Part shown: one piece after another, positions 3,940-8,923 of the stretch
Layout: each line of letters starts with the position of its first letter
How positions within the stretch are numbered: the stretch's first letter is position 1
NCBI GenBank assembly: GCA_965637545.1
Contig: OZ281495.1
Span: 2,666,001-2,730,000 of the forward strand
Source of the DNA: Phallusia mammillata
Lineage: Eukaryota
Direction: 5' to 3'
Length of the DNA stretch: 64,000 nucleotides
The notes under the pieces: generated by a model
Databases searched by the model: none
What the model saw: the letters and a program-made list of their open reading frames with translations, nothing else
Told to the model about the DNA's origin: nothing
Translations under genes and position numbers: made by a program

Positions 3940-5424
3940 GGCACCAATGTTGGTTCTTAGCCACAATACAAATTTCTAATCATATACCCAATGTGGAGTT
4001 TATCCAGTAAAATTGCACACAACATTTTTTGCATTTTGGCTGCATAAAATGTTAATATTTGTTATAGCTTGTGTGAGCTTTTTACTGGTTACTTTTAACT
4101 TGTATGGCAATGTTACATAAAGAACTGTTGCATTAATTTTATTTTGCAACAAATTAAGATGCAGTACATAGTTGTTAAAAACGTCATGCACAAATTTAAA
4201 TTACAGTATAAAACACAGCAGAACCAAAAACCTGTTTAAGATAAAATAATGTCTTTCATTTTGCAAATAAGAACATTTGTTCTCCAGGGATGCTGAAGGG
4301 ATACAACCACATGCACACTATTTTGCAATTTACTGTTTGCCAAACACAAAGAAAATAATGCAGAAAGTTTGAAAATTCATTTTCATTGTTGCTTTACTTT
4401 TAAAGTTGGTTTTAAATTTCTCAATTAATATGATGTTATAGTCTTATAATAGTAGTCAAATTTTGTAGATTGTTTACTTTTGTTAAGCTTTCTCTTTTTT
4501 TTTCAATTCACCATAGTATGCCTGTCATAAAATGTTTAGTTGGGTTGGCTTGTACCGATTTTTTAGTTTGGGTAAAATAGTGGTAGAGCTAGAACATATT
4601 TGTAGTTCTTGGGTCACATGCAAACAGCAAGCATCCTGACAATGACAAAAAAGAAAAGAAACATTTCAAAGTAAAACTGATGTAAAATACTGCAAAGTTT
4701 GACTGGAACTGTACTTGTCACACTTTTATCTTCAAACTTGTGTGTTTGGAGCAACTTGGAGGTTCATCTGAATTGCCGGAATATTTCAATTTGGGAGTTT
4801 TTTGTTTTAAAGTAACAAGTTTGCATTTCAAAACCATATAATAAACCGATTTTAGATGTCCTTTATCACTGACTTTGGTGTTTGGAAAAAAGTGCTTTTC
4901 CTTGTGAAGATTTGATAAGGTTTGGCTATGACAGTTCAGTTGGTTGGCATCCAGCAGGTATATGAGATAATAGATTGATCGTAAATAGAAAGTATCTGTT
5001 CTCCCAGTAAATCTCTTATTTATTTATCTAAAAAATAAAAAAAATAGGCGGTGGCATGTATTATTAGGAATTAGGATATGACTGGCATGCATTAGCTTTT
5101 ATAAAATTGGGCTATACTGTACACAAACTTACCACAAGTATACTTGTATCATATATGATGACATAGTTGGCGCAGAAGTCACAGGACACAACAGGTTTAC
5201 TTAACAACAGCGCTCCTGTATGTACAGATAACAGATAAGTCTAAAAACCAGACATTTTTACTTAATAATGATGCAATAATCACAAAAACATTACTTGTTA
5301 CTTACCACTAGCAGGCTACAACTGAAAATTGTAGAATCGACTACTGTTCGGTGTAACTAGGCGTATCACAGCATTTAACAAAATGGACTATATATTGTCG
5401 TATGATTTCCACGTCTCAAAAAAC

Positions 5425-8400
5425 TTAGATGTGATCGGATATATTTTGAAACCAGTCGCTGAATGCTGTATCGCATTCATGTACTGTCCGATATCCACCT
5501 TGTAACTTGGTTGTGGGGCATTTTAGGACAAGATGGTCTGTGTCTTGCTTATTTGCTCCACAGTGTGGGCATTCCGAACTCGTTCTTTCGCCCCAGCGTT
5601 GAAGCATGTGGGCAGTGCGAGCGTGTTTTGATCGCACTCGGTTCGCTGCTACCCAGTGACGTCTATGTGCTAAGTCGAAACCTGGCAGTGGAGTTGTTGG
5701 GTCGTCTACTAGCTCTCCTCCAGCGGGCATGTTATTAAACCAATATTGTTTCCATTCTTCAGTCATATCGAAAGTGTTGTCAGTCTCTAAGTTGTAGATT
5801 GGATGCCTGGATTTTAGTCTACGTGTTTTTGGTGCTTGTCTTATAATTTTGGTGAGGGGAATTTCCTCTGGAAGTGTTTGAAGATTCTGTATCATCTTCA
5901 TAGCTGATGCTCTGCGTCGTAAGTGTGGGGGAGGTATTGCACTCATTGTTGGTAGCCAAGTAATAGGGGTGGATTTTAGAGTTCCTGATATTATTCGCAT
6001 TGTTCTGTTCAGTTGGATGTCCAATTTTTTAGTGTGAGTACTACGCTCCCATGTTGAAGCACAGTATTCTGCAGCGCTATAACACAAAGCCAAGGCAGAT
6101 GTTCTCAGGACTGATTGACTTGCTCCCCATCTAGTGGCTGCTAGTTTGTTGATCAGTGAGTTTCTAGTTTTTATCTTGTTTGATAGTTTCTGCAAATGTT
6201 GTCTATAATTTAAAGTTCTGTCTAATGTTATTCCAAGATACTTCGGATTGGGGTCCGTTGGCAGTTGCTTTCCATCGATTATAATATTGAGTTGTTGGTT
6301 TGCGCGGTGATTGTCCAGGTGGAAAAGAGTTGTCACTGTTTTAGTGGTGTTCATTTGTAGATACCATGTCGTGAAGTATTCCTGGAGAGTGGTGAGATCA
6401 GCTGTGAGTTGGTTTTGAATCGTTGTTAGACAATTTCCTTGATAAGTTAGTGCCCAGTCATCCGCATAGCCGAATTTAAGACATTTGGTTTTAGGCATGT
6501 CTCTGATGTATATGTTGAATAGTGTAGGGGACAGTACGGAGCCCTGAGGTACCCCGTTTTTTATTTTAAAAGTTTTGCTGGTGTCGGAACCTACACATGT
6601 GTAGAAGCGACGAGTACCTGTCATTTTTGATATGATTCGCAGCATGGTTCTGCATTTTATTATTTTGGCTAGTTTTAGTAGAAGACCATCATGCCATACT
6701 GTATCGTAGGCAGCTGATAAATCTACGAATATGGCTCCAGTTGTGTTTTTTAGTTCATATCCTGTTTCAATGTGTGATGTTAAAGCAAGGACGTGTTCAC
6801 TGGTGCAACGATGTTTTCTAAACCCAGATTGTTCAGAGGGTAAGAATGGTTCGACTAGTGGCGTTATTCTGGCAAGTATGATTCTTTCCAAAACTTTGTA
6901 GGTGCAGCATAGAAGAGAAATTGGCCTGTAACTGCTTGGGTTGGTTGGATCTTTTCCTGGTTTCAAAATTGCTATCACTTTTGCTATTTTCCAATCTTTG
7001 GGAAGTTGTCCAGTTTGAATAATGTCTGTCAATGCGGTCCTCAGCCATTGAAGACTGTTATTTCCTAGATGTTTCAGCATTTCTGGGTAAATTCCATCTA
7101 TTCCAGCAGCTTTGCTCGCTTTTGTTTGCTTTAGCGCCTCTTTTAATTCTGACATTAGTATATGTGATGACAGGTTGGAATCTTCCGTGTATGTGCGGTA
7201 TAGTTGTTGATATTCTTTTCTTACAGATTTTTCAAAAGTGTGGTTTGGTTTATGGTGTCCTCGTTGTTTAATTTCCTTTGCGATTTGGTTTGCACTTATC
7301 GGAGCTGCAGTTTTGGGCTTTGATGTTGAATTAAGGTCCAGTTTATGTAGAAGTGCCCATGCTTTACGGCTTGAGTGTTTGAAGTCGAGATTTTCAACTG
7401 TACTGATCCATCTGTTTCTCCTGTCTTTATTAAGCGATGATAATAGTTGGTCTGCTGTATTATTGTCATTTGTTTCTTCGTAAGCTTTGAACAAGGCCTC
7501 ACTTTCTTTTGACCAGCAGGGAACATACCTTTTTCGTCTACCTCTTGGAATGTAGCGTCTTGCACTTTTTAAAACTAGTTTGTGAAATCTAGGTATTGTT
7601 TGAGCTGATGGAGGAATATGGATGCATGTCTGGTCCACGGCTTTAGCAAAGTTTTCCCAATCAGCTTGTTCGAAGTTCCATCTGTTTTTTGGAAGGGAGT
7701 TGATGATAGGAATTTTTAATCCAACTGTAGTTATTATGGGCCGATGTTGGCTATGTGGAAAGGAGGGCAGAATTTCTGTAGTTGCTGGCAATGGATCAAG
7801 GTTATCGTTTTTTGATACGAGGCATAGATCTGTTGAATAATCTTTGTTCCATCTTGAGGAATGAAAGGTACCCTGGGTTTTGGGGTCGTATAGTAGATGA
7901 AGATTTGTGTCATTTATCCATTGTCCTAATTGTTCGCCTGCTTTGTCGTTTTCATTATATCCCCAGTCGGTGTTGTGGCTGTTAAAGTCCCCAATGTAAA
8001 CAGTGGGGCGAGGAAAGGGTTGGAGAGGAGGATTCGGCCATTCTTTGTTTGGTGGTTTGTACAAGTTAACAACCGTTAGTTCTTTGATTTTTACTGCTGA
8101 TCTGTGAGTGTTGTTGGATGTTAAGACTGATTGCAATTCTGTCACTTCAGAAGGGTTTTTGGCATAGGTGCATATCCCGTATTTGTCATGGCAGATTTTT
8201 GAAATAAGAGTGTATCCTGGTATTCGGGTCTTTGATTCCGGTGATGTTGCTGTAGCGTGGGTTTCTTGGAGTAATGCGATGTCCACTCTGTGTTGGTGGA
8301 GGATTTTCCCAAGATATTCGCATTTGGGCATTGAACTTCCCTCGATGTTAAGTGAAAGGATCTTAGTCTGGTTACAGAGTTCAATGGAGCCTAACTTATT

Positions 8401-8505
8401 TTTCGAACCTGCTGGGCTCTGTGGGTTGTCAGCAGGAACGCGAACGTTTTTATTCTGGGCCACGTTCGATCCAGCATTTTGTTTCATTTCTTTGTAAAGC
8501 ATCAT
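5425..8505 (-). CDS. APE endonuclease + reverse transcriptase + C-terminal CCHC finger (LINE polyprotein, uninterrupted)
   Basis: APE motifs LSLNIEG, LLQETH, GDFNSH, DLCL, SQHRPI. RT motifs YRPISLL, QSGFR, FVDLSAAYDTV, GVPQGSVLSPTLFNIY, YADD, YLGITLD. Zinc finger CPHCG..DTDHLVLKC. Confidence 0.97.
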   Translation of the reverse strand: MMLYKEMKQNAGSNVAQNKNVRVPADNPQSPAGSKNKLGSIELCNQTKILSLNIEGSSMPKCEYLGKILHQHRVDIALLQETHATATSPESKTRIPGYTLISKICHDKYGICTYAKNPSEVTELQSVLTSNNTHRSAVKIKELTVVNLYKPPNKEWPNPPLQPFPRPTVYIGDFNSHNTDWGYNENDKAGEQLGQWINDTNLHLLYDPKTQGTFHSSRWNKDYSTDLCLVSKNDNLDPLPATTEILPSFPHSQHRPIITTVGLKIPIINSLPKNRWNFEQADWENFAKAVDQTCIHIPPSAQTIPRFHKLVLKSARRYIPRGRRKRYVPCWSKESEALFKAYEETNDNNTADQLLSSLNKDRRNRWISTVENLDFKHSSRKAWALLHKLDLNSTSKPKTAAPISANQIAKEIKQRGHHKPNHTFEKSVRKEYQQLYRTYTEDSNLSSHILMSELKEALKQTKASKAAGIDGIYPEMLKHLGNNSLQWLRTALTDIIQTGQLPKDWKIAKVIAILKPGKDPTNPSSYRPISLLCCTYKVLERIILARITPLVEPFLPSEQSGFRKHRCTSEHVLALTSHIETGYELKNTTGAIFVDLSAAYDTVWHDGLLLKLAKIIKCRTMLRIISKMTGTRRFYTCVGSDTSKTFKIKNGVPQGSVLSPTLFNIYIRDMPKTKCLKFGYADDWALTYQGNCLTTIQNQLTADLTTLQEYFTTWYLQMNTTKTVTTLFHLDNHRANQQLNIIIDGKQLPTDPNPKYLGITLDRTLNYRQHLQKLSNKIKTRNSLINKLAATRWGASQSVLRTSALALCYSAAEYCASTWERSTHTKKLDIQLNRTMRIISGTLKSTPITWLPTMSAIPPPHLRRRASAMKMIQNLQTLPEEIPLTKIIRQAPKTRRLKSRHPIYNLETDNTFDMTEEWKQYWFNNMPAGGELVDDPTTPLPGFDLAHRRHWVAANRVRSKHARTAHMLQRWGERTSSECPHCGANKQDTDHLVLKCPTTKLQGGYRTVHECDTAFSDWFQNISDHI

Positions 8506-8571
8506 AGTAGGTAAGGTAGTTATTCAGAGATGTGTACCCAGGATGGCGCATTGCCGTTTGGGTACCGGGTT

Positions 8572-8636
8572 GGACTCGATCTTAGTGATTGTAAGCCCCT
8601 ACACCAACGACAAGGTGTCGAGTCCCTTCGTAGGGG
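8572..8636 (-). ncRNA. HDV-like self-cleaving ribozyme at the LINE 5' end
   Basis: CCCCUAC GAAG GGACUCGAC ACC UUGUCGUU GGU GUAGGGG CU UACAAUCA CUAAG A UCGAGUCC. P1 7 bp, P2 8 bp (+C-G), P3 ACC/GGU, 8-nt L3, single G-C P1.1, minimal P4, J4/2 CUAA with candidate catalytic C at 8585. Nucleotide +1 coincides with the TSD-defined 5' end. Confidence 0.85.
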
Positions 8637-8923
8637 ACAAAATGGACTGCGATGTTTTAAGCCTAAAAACCGAAAACCCCTCGCAAAAAGGATTTGCTGA
8701 CTTTTCAAAAATAACTTATCGGTCGTTGCAGTACATTTACCTCCAATTTGCTACAGCGCATAACCTCGATAGGGGTCACGCACAAAAAGGACGGTGTCTT
8801 TTAACTCACCTAATTGACTATTTTCGCTCAACAACTAATTTAAGAGTTGAACTGGGCTTAAAACACCATTTTTAGTATTTCGCGCCAAATTTGCTAATTC
8901 CTTCTTGACAACCGTAACTCAGG

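What the first reader, a model, noticed from the sequence alone, without database searches (positions are those of the whole stretch)
8572..8636. HDV-like ribozyme starting exactly at nucleotide +1 of the LINE
A complete nested double pseudoknot in only 65 nt. L3 UUGUCGUU parallels HDV UCCUCGCU with a compensatory P1.1 swap (G-C instead of C-G). The first pair is C-G rather than G-U and P4 is nearly absent. P3 ACC/GGU and J4/2 CUAAG match my recollection of the trypanosome L1Tc Pr77 ribozyme. Such ribozymes are known to process non-LTR 5' ends; this very small variant may be undescribed. A competing hairpin CUUA-CAAUCAC-UAAG could sequester the catalytic C and modulate activity.
Basis: partly seen in the sequence, partly recalled or inferred. 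Interest (0 to 1): 0.72.

Follow-up and report, generated by a model that had tools for sequence, protein, structure and literature searches.

The report
Small HDV-like ribozyme heading a LINE
The first 65 bases of a recently active sea-squirt jumping gene (a LINE) fold like a hepatitis-delta-type self-cutting RNA. Related copies elsewhere in the genome keep the fold through matched base changes, so this is very probably a real ribozyme of a kind already known to trim the front ends of such elements.

Summary
On the minus strand, 8636->8572 draws as a nested double pseudoknot, and 8636 is exactly nucleotide +1 of a 3.25-kb LINE with one APE+RT ORF. The LINE has 12-bp target-site duplications, the empty site is seen in nine other copies of the host repeat, and 16 insertions with unrelated flanks start at the same base.

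Rfam finds nothing here. The same core occurs at least 140 times in this genome in several sequence subfamilies. These keep P1, P2 and an extra 20-56 pair through compensatory changes: 99.5% of cells paired, against 23-44% when partners are slid. They also hold the catalytic-site nucleotides invariant (L3 U..CG, J4/2 C-N-A-A). A covariance model built without this LINE family finds 8574-8636 as its only hit in the window.

A second LINE family in the genome starts with a canonical CPEB3/HDV-like ribozyme.

The deviations are a C1-G first pair, a one-pair swapped P1.1, and CUAAG in J4/2. All match the experimentally active L1Tc ribozyme of trypanosomes.

Cleavage itself is untested; the RNA runs gave only contigs. 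Verdict: a new member of a known kind.

The scan noted other copies of this family, and the related chromosome-end class, on other DNA before.

The parts
8572..8636 (-). Whole HDV-like ribozyme, 65 nt. The predicted cleavage is between 8637 and 8636.
   Evidence: Sequence. Descriptor hit. Covariance model R1, built without this family, matches 8574-8636 at 36.4 bits and is the only hit in the window.
8630..8636 (-). P1 5' strand CCCCUAC (nt 1-7)
   Evidence: Pairs with 8596-8602. Four of the 7 P1 pairs show changes on both sides across the class, with 99.4% of cells paired.
8626..8629 (-). J1/2 GAAG (nt 8-11)
   Evidence: Varies in length (0-4 nt) and sequence among subfamilies.
8617..8625 (-). 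P2 5' strand GGACUCGA plus C20 (nt 12-20)
   Evidence: Pairs with 8572-8579 and 8581. P2 was not part of the model's structure, yet 99.2% of its cells pair and 4 of the 5 testable pairs covary. Pair 20-56 is C-G, A-U or U-A in different subfamilies.
8614..8616 (-). P3 5' strand ACC (nt 21-23)
   Evidence: Pairs with GGU at 8603-8605. Invariant in all 25 aligned members, so there is no covariation either way.
8606..8613 (-). L3 UUGUCGUU (nt 24-31). U24, C28 and G29 correspond to HDV U20, C24 and G25. G26 is the L3 partner in P1.1.
   Evidence: U24, G26, C28 and G29 are invariant. The standard descriptor fixes U, C and G at these L3 positions (PMC6326823).
8603..8605 (-). P3 3' strand GGU (nt 32-34)
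8596..8602 (-). P1 3' strand GUAGGGG (nt 35-41)
8595..8595 (-). C42, the P1.1 partner of G26
   Evidence: G-C in 25 of 25 sequences. The orientation is swapped relative to HDV C-G.
8586..8594 (-). Linker UUACAAUCA (nt 43-51), in the place of P4
   Evidence: Runs from 2 to 11 nt with no conserved stem among subfamilies, and is only GU in the A2 relatives.
8582..8585 (-). J4/2 CUAA (nt 52-55). C52 at 8585 is the predicted catalytic cytosine.
   Evidence: C52, A54 and A55 are invariant across all subfamilies. This fits the C-N-R-A / C-R-R-A descriptor.
8572..8581 (-). G56 (pairs with C20), bulged A57, and P2 3' strand UCGAGUCC (nt 58-65)
5390..8636 (-). Host LINE, about 3,247 bp
   Evidence: Bounded by the target-site duplications and by the empty site in other copies. 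Copy ends agree.
5425..8505 (-). Intact ORF of 1026 aa: AP endonuclease, reverse transcriptase and C-terminal zf-RVT
   Evidence: Other copies have open frames of 1056 aa at 95-96% identity.
8637..8648 (-). Upstream target-site duplication AGTCCATTTTGT
5378..5389 (-). Downstream target-site duplication AGTCCATTTTGT

Best explanation
The first 65 nt of this LINE's RNA form a small, P4-less HDV-like (delta-like) self-cleaving ribozyme.

Inferred mechanism. The element is transcribed by read-through from whatever lies upstream. The nested double pseudoknot then folds (P1, P2 with the extra 20-56 pair, P3, and a one-pair P1.1). C52 (8585) in J4/2 acts as the general acid, and the chain is cut just 5' of C1 (8636). 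This releases a LINE RNA with a 5'-OH that starts at +1. That RNA is translated and reverse-transcribed at new sites, so every full-length copy begins at the same base whatever its flank.

What is shown: the fold, its conservation by compensatory change in relatives, the invariant core bases, and the exact 5' ends of the copies. What is inferred from the family: catalysis, the 5'-OH end, and co-transcription. The compact fold may also protect the uncapped 5' end or help translation start, as proposed for R2 and L1Tc.
For: (1) Exact +1. There are 12-bp target-site duplications and the empty site is seen in nine other copies. Sixteen loci with unrelated upstream DNA start at CC(C/U)(C/U)UAC. Several copies have intact ORFs of 1026-1056 aa.

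(2) Covariation. On 25 class members including this one, 99.5% of cells pair (shuffled 88.1%, 0 of 500 shuffles reach it; slid controls 23-44%). Eight of 16 pairs change on both sides, and the covariation score is 0.431 against 0.199. The result is the same without family A. P2 was not in the model's structure, so its support does not come from fitting.

(3) Core bases. L3 U24, C28 and G29, and J4/2 C52, A54 and A55, are invariant. They match the fixed positions of the standard descriptor (PMC6326823).

(4) Model detection. A model built only from other subfamilies finds 8574-8636 as its only hit in 64 kb, starting at model position 1 = 8636.

(5) Close relatives. In family A2, P1 changes from C4-G to G4-C, P2 from C17-G60 to U17-A60 with U-G seen as the intermediate, and the linker is lost while CUAAGA is kept.

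(6) Second LINE family. Another LINE family in the same genome starts exactly at a canonical G1-U HDV-like ribozyme, which scores 31.9 bits, E 1.2e-5, on Rfam CPEB3_ribozyme.

(7) Precedent. HDV-like ribozymes process R2, RTE, Baggins and L1Tc 5' ends (PMC6765202; PMC3774820). L1TcRz, with a C1 start, a one-pair P1.1 and CUAAG, cleaves in vitro at +1 leaving a 5'-OH (PMC3185411).
Against: No cleavage assay and no RNA 5'-end data exist. The only public runs were Logan contigs, whose ends at 8635/8637 simply mark the repeat boundary.

No Rfam family matches, even at E<=10.

The first pair is C-G, not the G-U wobble that binds the catalytic metal in HDV. P1.1 is one pair, in swapped orientation, and never varies. 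P3 never varies either.

Nested alternative folds of -18.4 kcal/mol compete, and the 65-mer is no more stable than its shuffles (z -0.75).

Within family A the ribozyme is nearly invariant, so the covariation comes from relatives that sit in other genomic contexts (inside or at the 3' end of non-coding repeats). The fold's job there may differ.
Confidence: 0.8

Rival explanations
1. The conserved pseudoknot is a structural RNA signal rather than a catalyst. It could be a binding site for the element's reverse transcriptase or endonuclease, a shield against 5' exonucleases, or an IRES-like start module. The precise 5' end would then come from something else.
For: In at least 120 other class members the same core is not at a 5' end. 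It lies inside a conserved module at the 3' end of non-coding repeats, where self-removal looks pointless but recognition by a reverse transcriptase would make sense. R2 protein is reported to bind its 5' pseudoknot RNA, and the fold is reported to protect or help translate R2 and L1Tc RNA.
Against: The invariant positions are exactly the catalytic ones of HDV-like ribozymes: the J4/2 C, the A-A, and the L3 U..CG. P1 begins exactly at +1. The two roles do not exclude each other in R2 or L1Tc.
Confidence: 0.12
2. The first about 65 bp act as an internal DNA promoter of the Pr77 or initiator type, which starts transcription at 8636. The RNA fold would be secondary.
For: L1Tc's first 77 nt are both promoter and ribozyme. 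Many LINEs owe precise 5' ends to internal promoters.
Against: Compensatory changes preserve RNA pairing, not DNA sequence. The G-U pairs in relatives are strand-specific. The same core works in contexts with conserved upstream leaders, where it cannot mark a start site. Nothing excludes an additional promoter.
Confidence: 0.06
3. The fold is a chance set of complementarities in a GC-balanced 5' UTR.
For: Loose descriptors do hit background sequence, with 7 other starts in 128 kb. The nested fold is not unusually stable.
Against: The position is exactly +1. All 18 helix pairs of P1, P2 and P3 are Watson-Crick. A core pattern gives 134 genome hits against 0 for its reversed control. Covariation and detection by an independent model also argue against chance.
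Confidence: 0.01

Closest known systems
L1TcRz, the HDV-like ribozyme in the first 77 nt (Pr77) of the Trypanosoma cruzi L1Tc/NARTc LINEs (ingi clade)
   Same: It sits at +1 of an APE-type LINE and is cleaved 5' of C1. P1 starts CCC... and pairs with ...GGG, the reverse GC orientation to HDV. The P3 3' strand is GGU. P1.1 is a single pair. J4/2 reads CUAAG followed by 1-2 nt before the P2 3' strand. The target-site duplication is 12 bp. Sources: PMC3185411; PMC4035085; PMC6765202.
   Different: L1TcRz is 77 nt with a 5-bp P4 (UCUAG/CUAGA), whereas here the P4 place holds a 9-nt linker. L1Tc has RNase H and a poly(A) tail and lives in a protist. Its Pr77 is also a proven promoter. I could not read nt 8-26 of Pr77, so L3 and the P2 5' strand were not compared. 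The clade of this LINE (RTE-like or Vingi/Ingi-like) is unresolved.
HDV-like ribozymes at the 5' ends of RTE and Baggins elements of insects (Ruminski et al. 2011, as summarised in PMC6765202 and PMC3774820)
   Same: The host architecture is the same: a compact, promoter-less, single-ORF APE+RT element of about 3.2 kb. The proposed job is the same: release from a read-through transcript at +1.
   Different: The primary paper is not in the library, so sequences were not compared. The Rfam drz-Agam models do not match this element.
R2 retrotransposon ribozymes
   Same: The double pseudoknot has few invariant bases (the catalytic C and the L3 G). P4 is absent in some lineages. P1 is 6-7 bp and P2 at least 5 bp. 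They process the 5' end (PMC3774820).
   Different: R2 is site-specific in 28S rDNA, uses a restriction-like endonuclease, often cuts upstream in the 28S sequence, and mostly keeps G1 and HDV-like P1.1.
Minimal HDV-like ribozymes (drz-Mtgn, theta ribozymes of gut phages)
   Same: They lack P4, are about 50-60 nt, and have the catalytic C as the first base of J4/2 (PMC10879173; PMC6326823).
   Different: They are found in metagenomes and phages next to tRNAs. Their descriptor keeps G1-Y and the C-G P1.1 pairs. They have no link to retrotransposons.
CPEB3 and HDV ribozymes (Rfam RF00622, RF00094)
   Same: The overall topology is the same, as are the L3 U..CG and the C-N-R-A of J4/2.
   Different: No Rfam score is obtained here. 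The differences are a C1-G first pair, a swapped one-pair P1.1 and no P4. By contrast, the second LINE family of this genome (L064:571-665, L065 from 567) does score on both models.

Membership tests
HDV-like (delta-like) self-cleaving ribozymes | Nested double pseudoknot: P1 and P2 cross, and P3 lies inside both | tested here: met
   P1 is 7 bp, P2 is 8+1 bp and P3 is 3 bp in the sequence. P1 and P2 are kept by changes on both sides in relatives; 99.5% of cells pair against 23-44% when partners are slid. P3 is invariant, so it is complementary but untested by covariation.
HDV-like (delta-like) self-cleaving ribozymes | Catalytic cytosine as the first base of J4/2, in a C-N/R-R-A context just before the P2 3' strand | tested here: met
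   C52-U-A-A at 8585-8582. C, A and A are invariant in all subfamilies (CUAA, CCAA, CAAA, CGAA).
HDV-like (delta-like) self-cleaving ribozymes | L3 with conserved U (position 1) and C-G (positions 5-6); U and G form the reverse wobble | tested here: met
   L3 is UUGUCGUU. U24, C28 and G29 are invariant in 25 of 25 sequences. The requirement is stated in PMC6326823 and PMC3774820.
HDV-like (delta-like) self-cleaving ribozymes | P1.1 pairing between L3 and the bases after the P1 3' strand (two C-G pairs in HDV; one pair in L1TcRz) | tested here: inconclusive
   G26-C42 is complementary in 25 of 25 sequences but never varies. It is a single pair in swapped orientation, and the second position is U-U. 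An accepted active member, L1TcRz, also has a single pair.
HDV-like (delta-like) self-cleaving ribozymes | G1-U (G1-Y) wobble at the cleavage site | tested here: not met
   The pair is C1-G41 here and in every class member. The feature is fixed in the standard descriptor but is not universal. L1TcRz is cleaved at C1, and the L1Tc/ingi ribozymes have reversed GC pairs in P1, which led their authors to call the descriptor too restrictive. I therefore do not treat it as defining.
HDV-like (delta-like) self-cleaving ribozymes | Self-cleavage immediately 5' of P1, giving 5'-OH and 2',3'-cyclic phosphate, dependent on divalent metal and on the catalytic C | not testable with these tools
   Only indirect evidence: 16 independent full-length copies start exactly at P1 nt 1. 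The RNA runs were contigs only.
L1TcRz / Pr77-type subgroup | C1 start with CCC.../...GGG P1, P3 3' strand GGU, J4/2 CUAAG, one-pair P1.1 | tested here: met
   Compared with Pr77 nt 1-5 and 27-77, rebuilt from the primers printed in PMC3185411, and with the text on P1.1. Nt 6-26 of Pr77 were not available.
L1TcRz / Pr77-type subgroup | Host element of the ingi/L1Tc (or sister Vingi) clade; the first 77 nt also act as a promoter | not tested
   Pfam gives only APE + RT + zf-RVT with no RNase H. No phylogeny was made. An earlier first-stage note calls another copy 'Ingi/Vingi-like', unchecked.
RTE-clade LINE (host element) | About 3.2-3.3 kb, a single ORF of about 1000 aa with APE then RT, and a very short AT-rich 3' UTR without a poly(A) tail | tested here: met
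   The element is 3,247 bp with a 1026-aa ORF, and its 35-nt 3' UTR ends in ATATAT. These criteria come from my own knowledge of RTE. Vingi elements are also compact and single-ORF, so this does not settle the clade.
RTE-clade LINE (host element) | Placement of the RT domain inside the RTE clade in a phylogeny | not tested
   No reference LINE proteins were at hand. The large protein search was not spent on this.

The most novel reading that the evidence does not exclude
The element may be one face of a distinct, mobile subclass of minimal HDV-like ribozymes. The subclass features are a C1-G first pair, a swapped one-pair P1.1, no P4, and a ninth P2 pair with a bulge. It may share ancestry with the L1Tc/ingi Pr77 ribozyme of trypanosomes. 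In this chordate the subclass has been deployed in at least three ways: at +1 of an autonomous LINE; at the 3' end of non-coding repeats that point toward chromosome ends, with a leader hairpin whose loop pairs with the ribozyme's tail; and beside a 186-bp satellite. If the 3'-terminal copies are used as reverse-transcriptase recognition or end-forming modules, that would be a use of HDV-like ribozymes not described so far.
Probability: 0.3. Interest if true: 0.7.

Novelty: new member of a known kind. Interest (0 to 1): 0.45.

Why it matters
This extends ribozyme-defined LINE 5' ends to a tunicate, a chordate, using a 65-nt core that Rfam and the classic G1-U descriptor both miss. Such elements are therefore probably under-counted in animal genomes.

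The natural set of subfamilies gives a ready-made covariation series for a minimal HDV-like core that shares its odd features with the L1Tc ribozyme. [quoted passage not shown]

According to earlier scan notes, the same genome also has LINEs headed by a canonical HDV-like ribozyme and by a twister ribozyme. That would make it a good place to compare how different ribozymes serve the same job.

Tried and rejected
- Rfam at gathering and at E<=10 gave nothing at the locus.
Laying them showed contig breaks at 8635/8637, which any repeat boundary produces, so they say nothing about RNA ends or expression.
- Covariation within family A: the copies are 91-100% identical in the ribozyme and the variants are decayed copies, so this was uninformative.
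- MAFFT alignments that included family A misplaced its longer J1/2 (A1 and A3). I replaced them with a model-guided alignment (A5).
- Minimum-energy folding cannot see the pseudoknot and gave an unremarkable z-score.
- I looked for reverse-transcriptase coding capacity next to the non-LINE class members. tblastn with this LINE's protein and Pfam on their ORFs found none.
- I considered that the conserved leader upstream of the C-type copies was a spliced-leader or Sm-class small RNA gene. I dropped the idea because the U-run lies in a hairpin loop, the putative exon is not conserved, and Rfam is blank.
The 5' ends of the B-F repeats and more upstream context could therefore not be read.
- The primary papers Webb & Luptak 2011 and Ruminski 2011 are not in the library.
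- The LINE's clade (RTE or Vingi) was left open rather than spending the costly protein search on it.

Full report
**What is in the sequence**

On the minus strand, 8636->8572 reads CCCCUAC GAAG GGACUCGA C ACC UUGUCGUU GGU GUAGGGG C UUACAAUCA CUAA G A UCGAGUCC.
- P1: nt 1-7 with 35-41
- P2: nt 12-19 with 58-65
- P3: nt 21-23 with 32-34

P1 and P2 cross, which is the HDV-type nested double pseudoknot. G26 in L3 can pair with C42 (P1.1). Rfam finds nothing here, at gathering thresholds or at E<=10.

**The host element and its first base**

Downstream on the same strand is an intact 1026-aa ORF (8505-5425) with AP-endonuclease, reverse-transcriptase and zf-RVT domains. The element runs from 8636 to 5390, about 3,247 bp. 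Three lines of evidence fix these ends.
- The 12-nt AGTCCATTTTGT stands at 8648-8637 and again at 5389-5378.
- Nine other copies of the repeat into which the LINE inserted read ...AGTCCATTTTGT|TAAATGC... without interruption.
- In the whole genome, sixteen loci with unrelated upstream sequence begin at the same nucleotide.

Several copies have open frames of 1056 aa at 95-96% identity.

By architecture the element looks RTE-like: compact, one ORF, and a 35-nt AT-rich 3' UTR without a poly(A) tail. Vingi elements are also compact and single-ORF. I did not make a phylogeny, so the clade is open.

**Chance**

A deliberately loose descriptor was scanned over both strands of the window. It asked for a 7-bp P1 with up to one G-U, a P2 of at least 6 bp, a 3-bp P3, an L3 of 6-9 nt, and a C near P2'. 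It hits 8 start positions in 128 kb, and the candidate is the only one with all-Watson-Crick P1 and an 8-bp P2. That is a background near 5e-5 per position before requiring the +1 position or the conserved core bases. I did not run a larger simulation.

**Relatives and covariation**

Within the LINE family the ribozyme is almost invariant, so I looked further afield.

A close, decayed relative (family A2) is present as three copies in a local cluster on contig 7 (L061, L062, L069).
- It keeps the P3/L3 core and CUAAGA.
- It has lost the 9-nt linker.
- In P1, C4-G has become G4-C (G4-U in two copies).
- In P2, C17-G60 has become U17-A60, with U-G as the intermediate seen in L061.

A search for the core pattern then uncovered a large class: 134 hits against 0 for the reversed control. 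A covariance model finds at least 140 hits genome-wide.

The subfamilies differ in helix sequence but not in architecture.
- P1 is CCACUAC/GUAGUGG, CCACCGC/GCGGUGG, CCACUGC/GCAGUGG, CCAUUGC/GCAAUGG or CCAUCAC/GUGAUGG.
- P2 is GYCGG/CCGGC, GGGUUGG/CCAACUC, GGGUUGA/UCAACYC or AACUGG/CCAGUU.
- The base before P3 (nt 20) pairs with the fifth base after the catalytic C (nt 56) as C-G, A-U or U-A, with nt 57 bulged.

This last pair shows that J4/2 is the canonical four bases C-N-A-A and that P2 has a ninth pair.

| Measure | A2: 15 members, no family A | A5: 25 members incl. window, model-guided |
|---|---|---|
| Cells paired | 99.6% | 99.5% |
| Cells paired, shuffled mean | 90.0% | 88.1% |
| Cells paired, partners slid | 23-49% | 23-44% |
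| Pairs changed on both sides | 8 | 8 of 16 |
| Covariation score (shuffled mean) | 0.377 (0.184) | 0.431 (0.199) |
| Shuffles reaching the covariation score | 0 of 500 | 0 of 500 |

P2 was not in the model's structure, so its support is not an artefact of fitting. P3 and P1.1 never vary; they are complementary but untested. The model was built without the LINE family, yet it finds 8574-8636 at 36.4 bits as its only hit in the window, with model position 1 at 8636.

**Core bases**

These positions are invariant across all aligned members: L3 U24, G26, C28 and G29; C42; and J4/2 C52, A54 and A55. The standard HDV-like descriptor fixes U, C and G at the same L3 positions, because U and G form the reverse wobble needed for catalysis. 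It also fixes C-R-R-A in J4/2, with C as the general acid (PMC6326823; PMC3774820; PMC10879173). So the bases that never change are the catalytic ones.

**Deviations and their precedent**

Three features depart from HDV, CPEB3 and most R2 ribozymes:
- C1-G41 instead of G1-U
- a single P1.1 pair in swapped orientation
- no P4

All three have precedents. P4 is missing in silkmoth R2 ribozymes and in metagenomic minimal ribozymes.

The trypanosome L1Tc ribozyme is cleaved at C1 and has a one-pair P1.1. The L1Tc/ingi ribozymes are described as differing from HDV and R2 in the orientation of the GC pairs of P1 and in the size and composition of P1.1. Their authors conclude that the classic descriptor is too restrictive.

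From the primers printed in PMC3185411, Pr77 reads CCCUG... at its start. Its nt 27-77 read ...UGGU GCCAGGG UCUAG...CUAGA GAGGAAG CUAAG CG CCUGCUG. L1TcRz is active in vitro and leaves a 5'-OH at +1.

**Context in this genome**

A second LINE family is 33-36% identical in the endonuclease domain. Two copies with different flanks (L064 from 571, L065 from 567) start exactly at GGGAGGG. The 95 nt that follow form a canonical ribozyme with these features:
- G1-U first pair
- P2 AUGACAGCA/UGCUGUCAU
- P3 GCC/GGC
- L3 UACACGU
- a two-pair P1.1 and a long P4
- J4/2 CAGA

It scores 31.9 bits (E 1.2e-5) on Rfam CPEB3_ribozyme and 25 bits on HDV_ribozyme. Earlier notes of this scan report the same element, other copies of the present family, and a twister ribozyme at the 5' end of an RTE in what they call Phallusia. 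I verified only the first of these.

**How it most likely works**

HDV-like ribozymes at the 5' ends of R2, RTE, Baggins and L1Tc elements release the element's RNA from a read-through transcript (PMC6765202; PMC3774820). The same logic fits here. The element has no evident need of its own promoter. P1 starts at +1. Every full-length copy starts at that base, whatever lies upstream. The catalysis, the 5'-OH end and the co-transcription are inferred, not shown. A second role for the fold, in end protection or translation start, is possible.

**What I could not get**

The one run search returned only assembled contigs of runs guessed to be RNA. Their ends at 8635/8637 are what any repeat boundary gives, so there is no evidence on RNA ends or expression. 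Nested folding is blind to the pseudoknot and shows competing hairpins of -18.4 kcal/mol.

**The other class members**

Only in this LINE family is the core at a 5' terminus. Elsewhere it is embedded in a module of about 140 nt with three parts:
- a leader hairpin of about 72 nt that starts CCAGUSUS, whose stem itself covaries between subfamilies (CUCGCCC/GGGCGAG against CCUCGUCU/AGACGAGG)
- the ribozyme
- a tail, YGCAGAACC, complementary to the leader's loop GGUUCUGCR

In one subfamily the module ends a non-coding dispersed repeat of at least 3.4 kb. Another subfamily sits in a 5.2-kb tandem array. Another precedes a 186-bp satellite. The largest lies near contig ends, on the minus strand at low coordinates and mostly on the plus strand at high coordinates. 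That agrees with an earlier scan note. I found no reverse transcriptase next to any of them. What a 5'-cutting ribozyme does at the 3' end of an element is unexplained, and it keeps alive the rival that the fold also serves as a recognition structure.

**Verdict**

This is a new member of a known kind: a small, L1Tc-like, P4-less HDV-like ribozyme at +1 of a tunicate LINE. It is well supported by comparative evidence and untested at the bench.

Noticed in passing
L064:571-665 (G000:C1:35269270-35269364) and L065 from 567 (G000:C2:10327116): A second LINE family, 33-36% identical in the endonuclease domain and with ORFs of 959-1042 aa, starts exactly at a canonical 95-nt HDV-like ribozyme. That ribozyme has a G1-U first pair, a two-pair P1.1, a long P4 and J4/2 CAGA. 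It scores 31.9 bits on Rfam CPEB3_ribozyme, just under the gathering score of 35.
   Followed up: partly
e.g. L093:140-320, L125:60-200, L087:3903-4074; genome-wide list: At least 120 further copies of the same small ribozyme core sit inside a conserved module of about 140 nt. The module is a leader hairpin, then the ribozyme, then a tail YGCAGAACC that is complementary to the leader's loop. It ends non-coding repeats rather than heading them. Its function there is unexplained.
   Followed up: partly
G000 contig ends, e.g. C5:90785(-), C6:46786(-), C8:59645(-), C1:36326697(+), C4:31318263(+), C5:28131639(+): The CCAUUGC-type subfamily clusters within about 1 Mb of contig ends. Most copies are oriented toward the end, which suggests a subtelomeric repeat.
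   Followed up: partly
L048/L012 (G000:C2:28064xx), L053/L019 (C5:148790xx), L057 (C6:168595xx), L055 (C1:213222xx): Four copies of this LINE carry insertions of hAT-like miniature elements (ends CAGGGGTGGGCAAAC... or CAGTGGTTCTTAACC...). All are at the same 8-bp site, GTGTAGGG, inside the P1 3' strand, and the site is duplicated. This looks like an insertion hot spot.
   Followed up: no
window 8637-8800 and beyond; G000:C2:2806199-2807913: The LINE lies inside another dispersed repeat that has many copies at 85-95% identity. The whole repeat+LINE locus is duplicated about 132 kb away on the same contig, and that second copy also carries one of the MITE insertions.
   Followed up: partly
L061, L069, L062 (G000:C7:16820216, 16826102, 16829999): Three decayed copies of a related LINE (43-47% identical in protein, with stop codons) share their upstream flank, so they arose by local duplication. 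Their first 91 nt are 76-77% identical to the window's LINE, whereas the coding part aligns only at the protein level.
   Followed up: partly
L089:4257-5821, L090:4293-8001: A 186-bp satellite array starts about 35 nt downstream of the B-type ribozyme copies, and inverted arrays lie on the other side.
   Followed up: no
G000:C6:3302109-3325840 (L104): A C2-type ribozyme module recurs every 5,202 bp in a tandem array of at least five units. The units have no long ORF.
   Followed up: no
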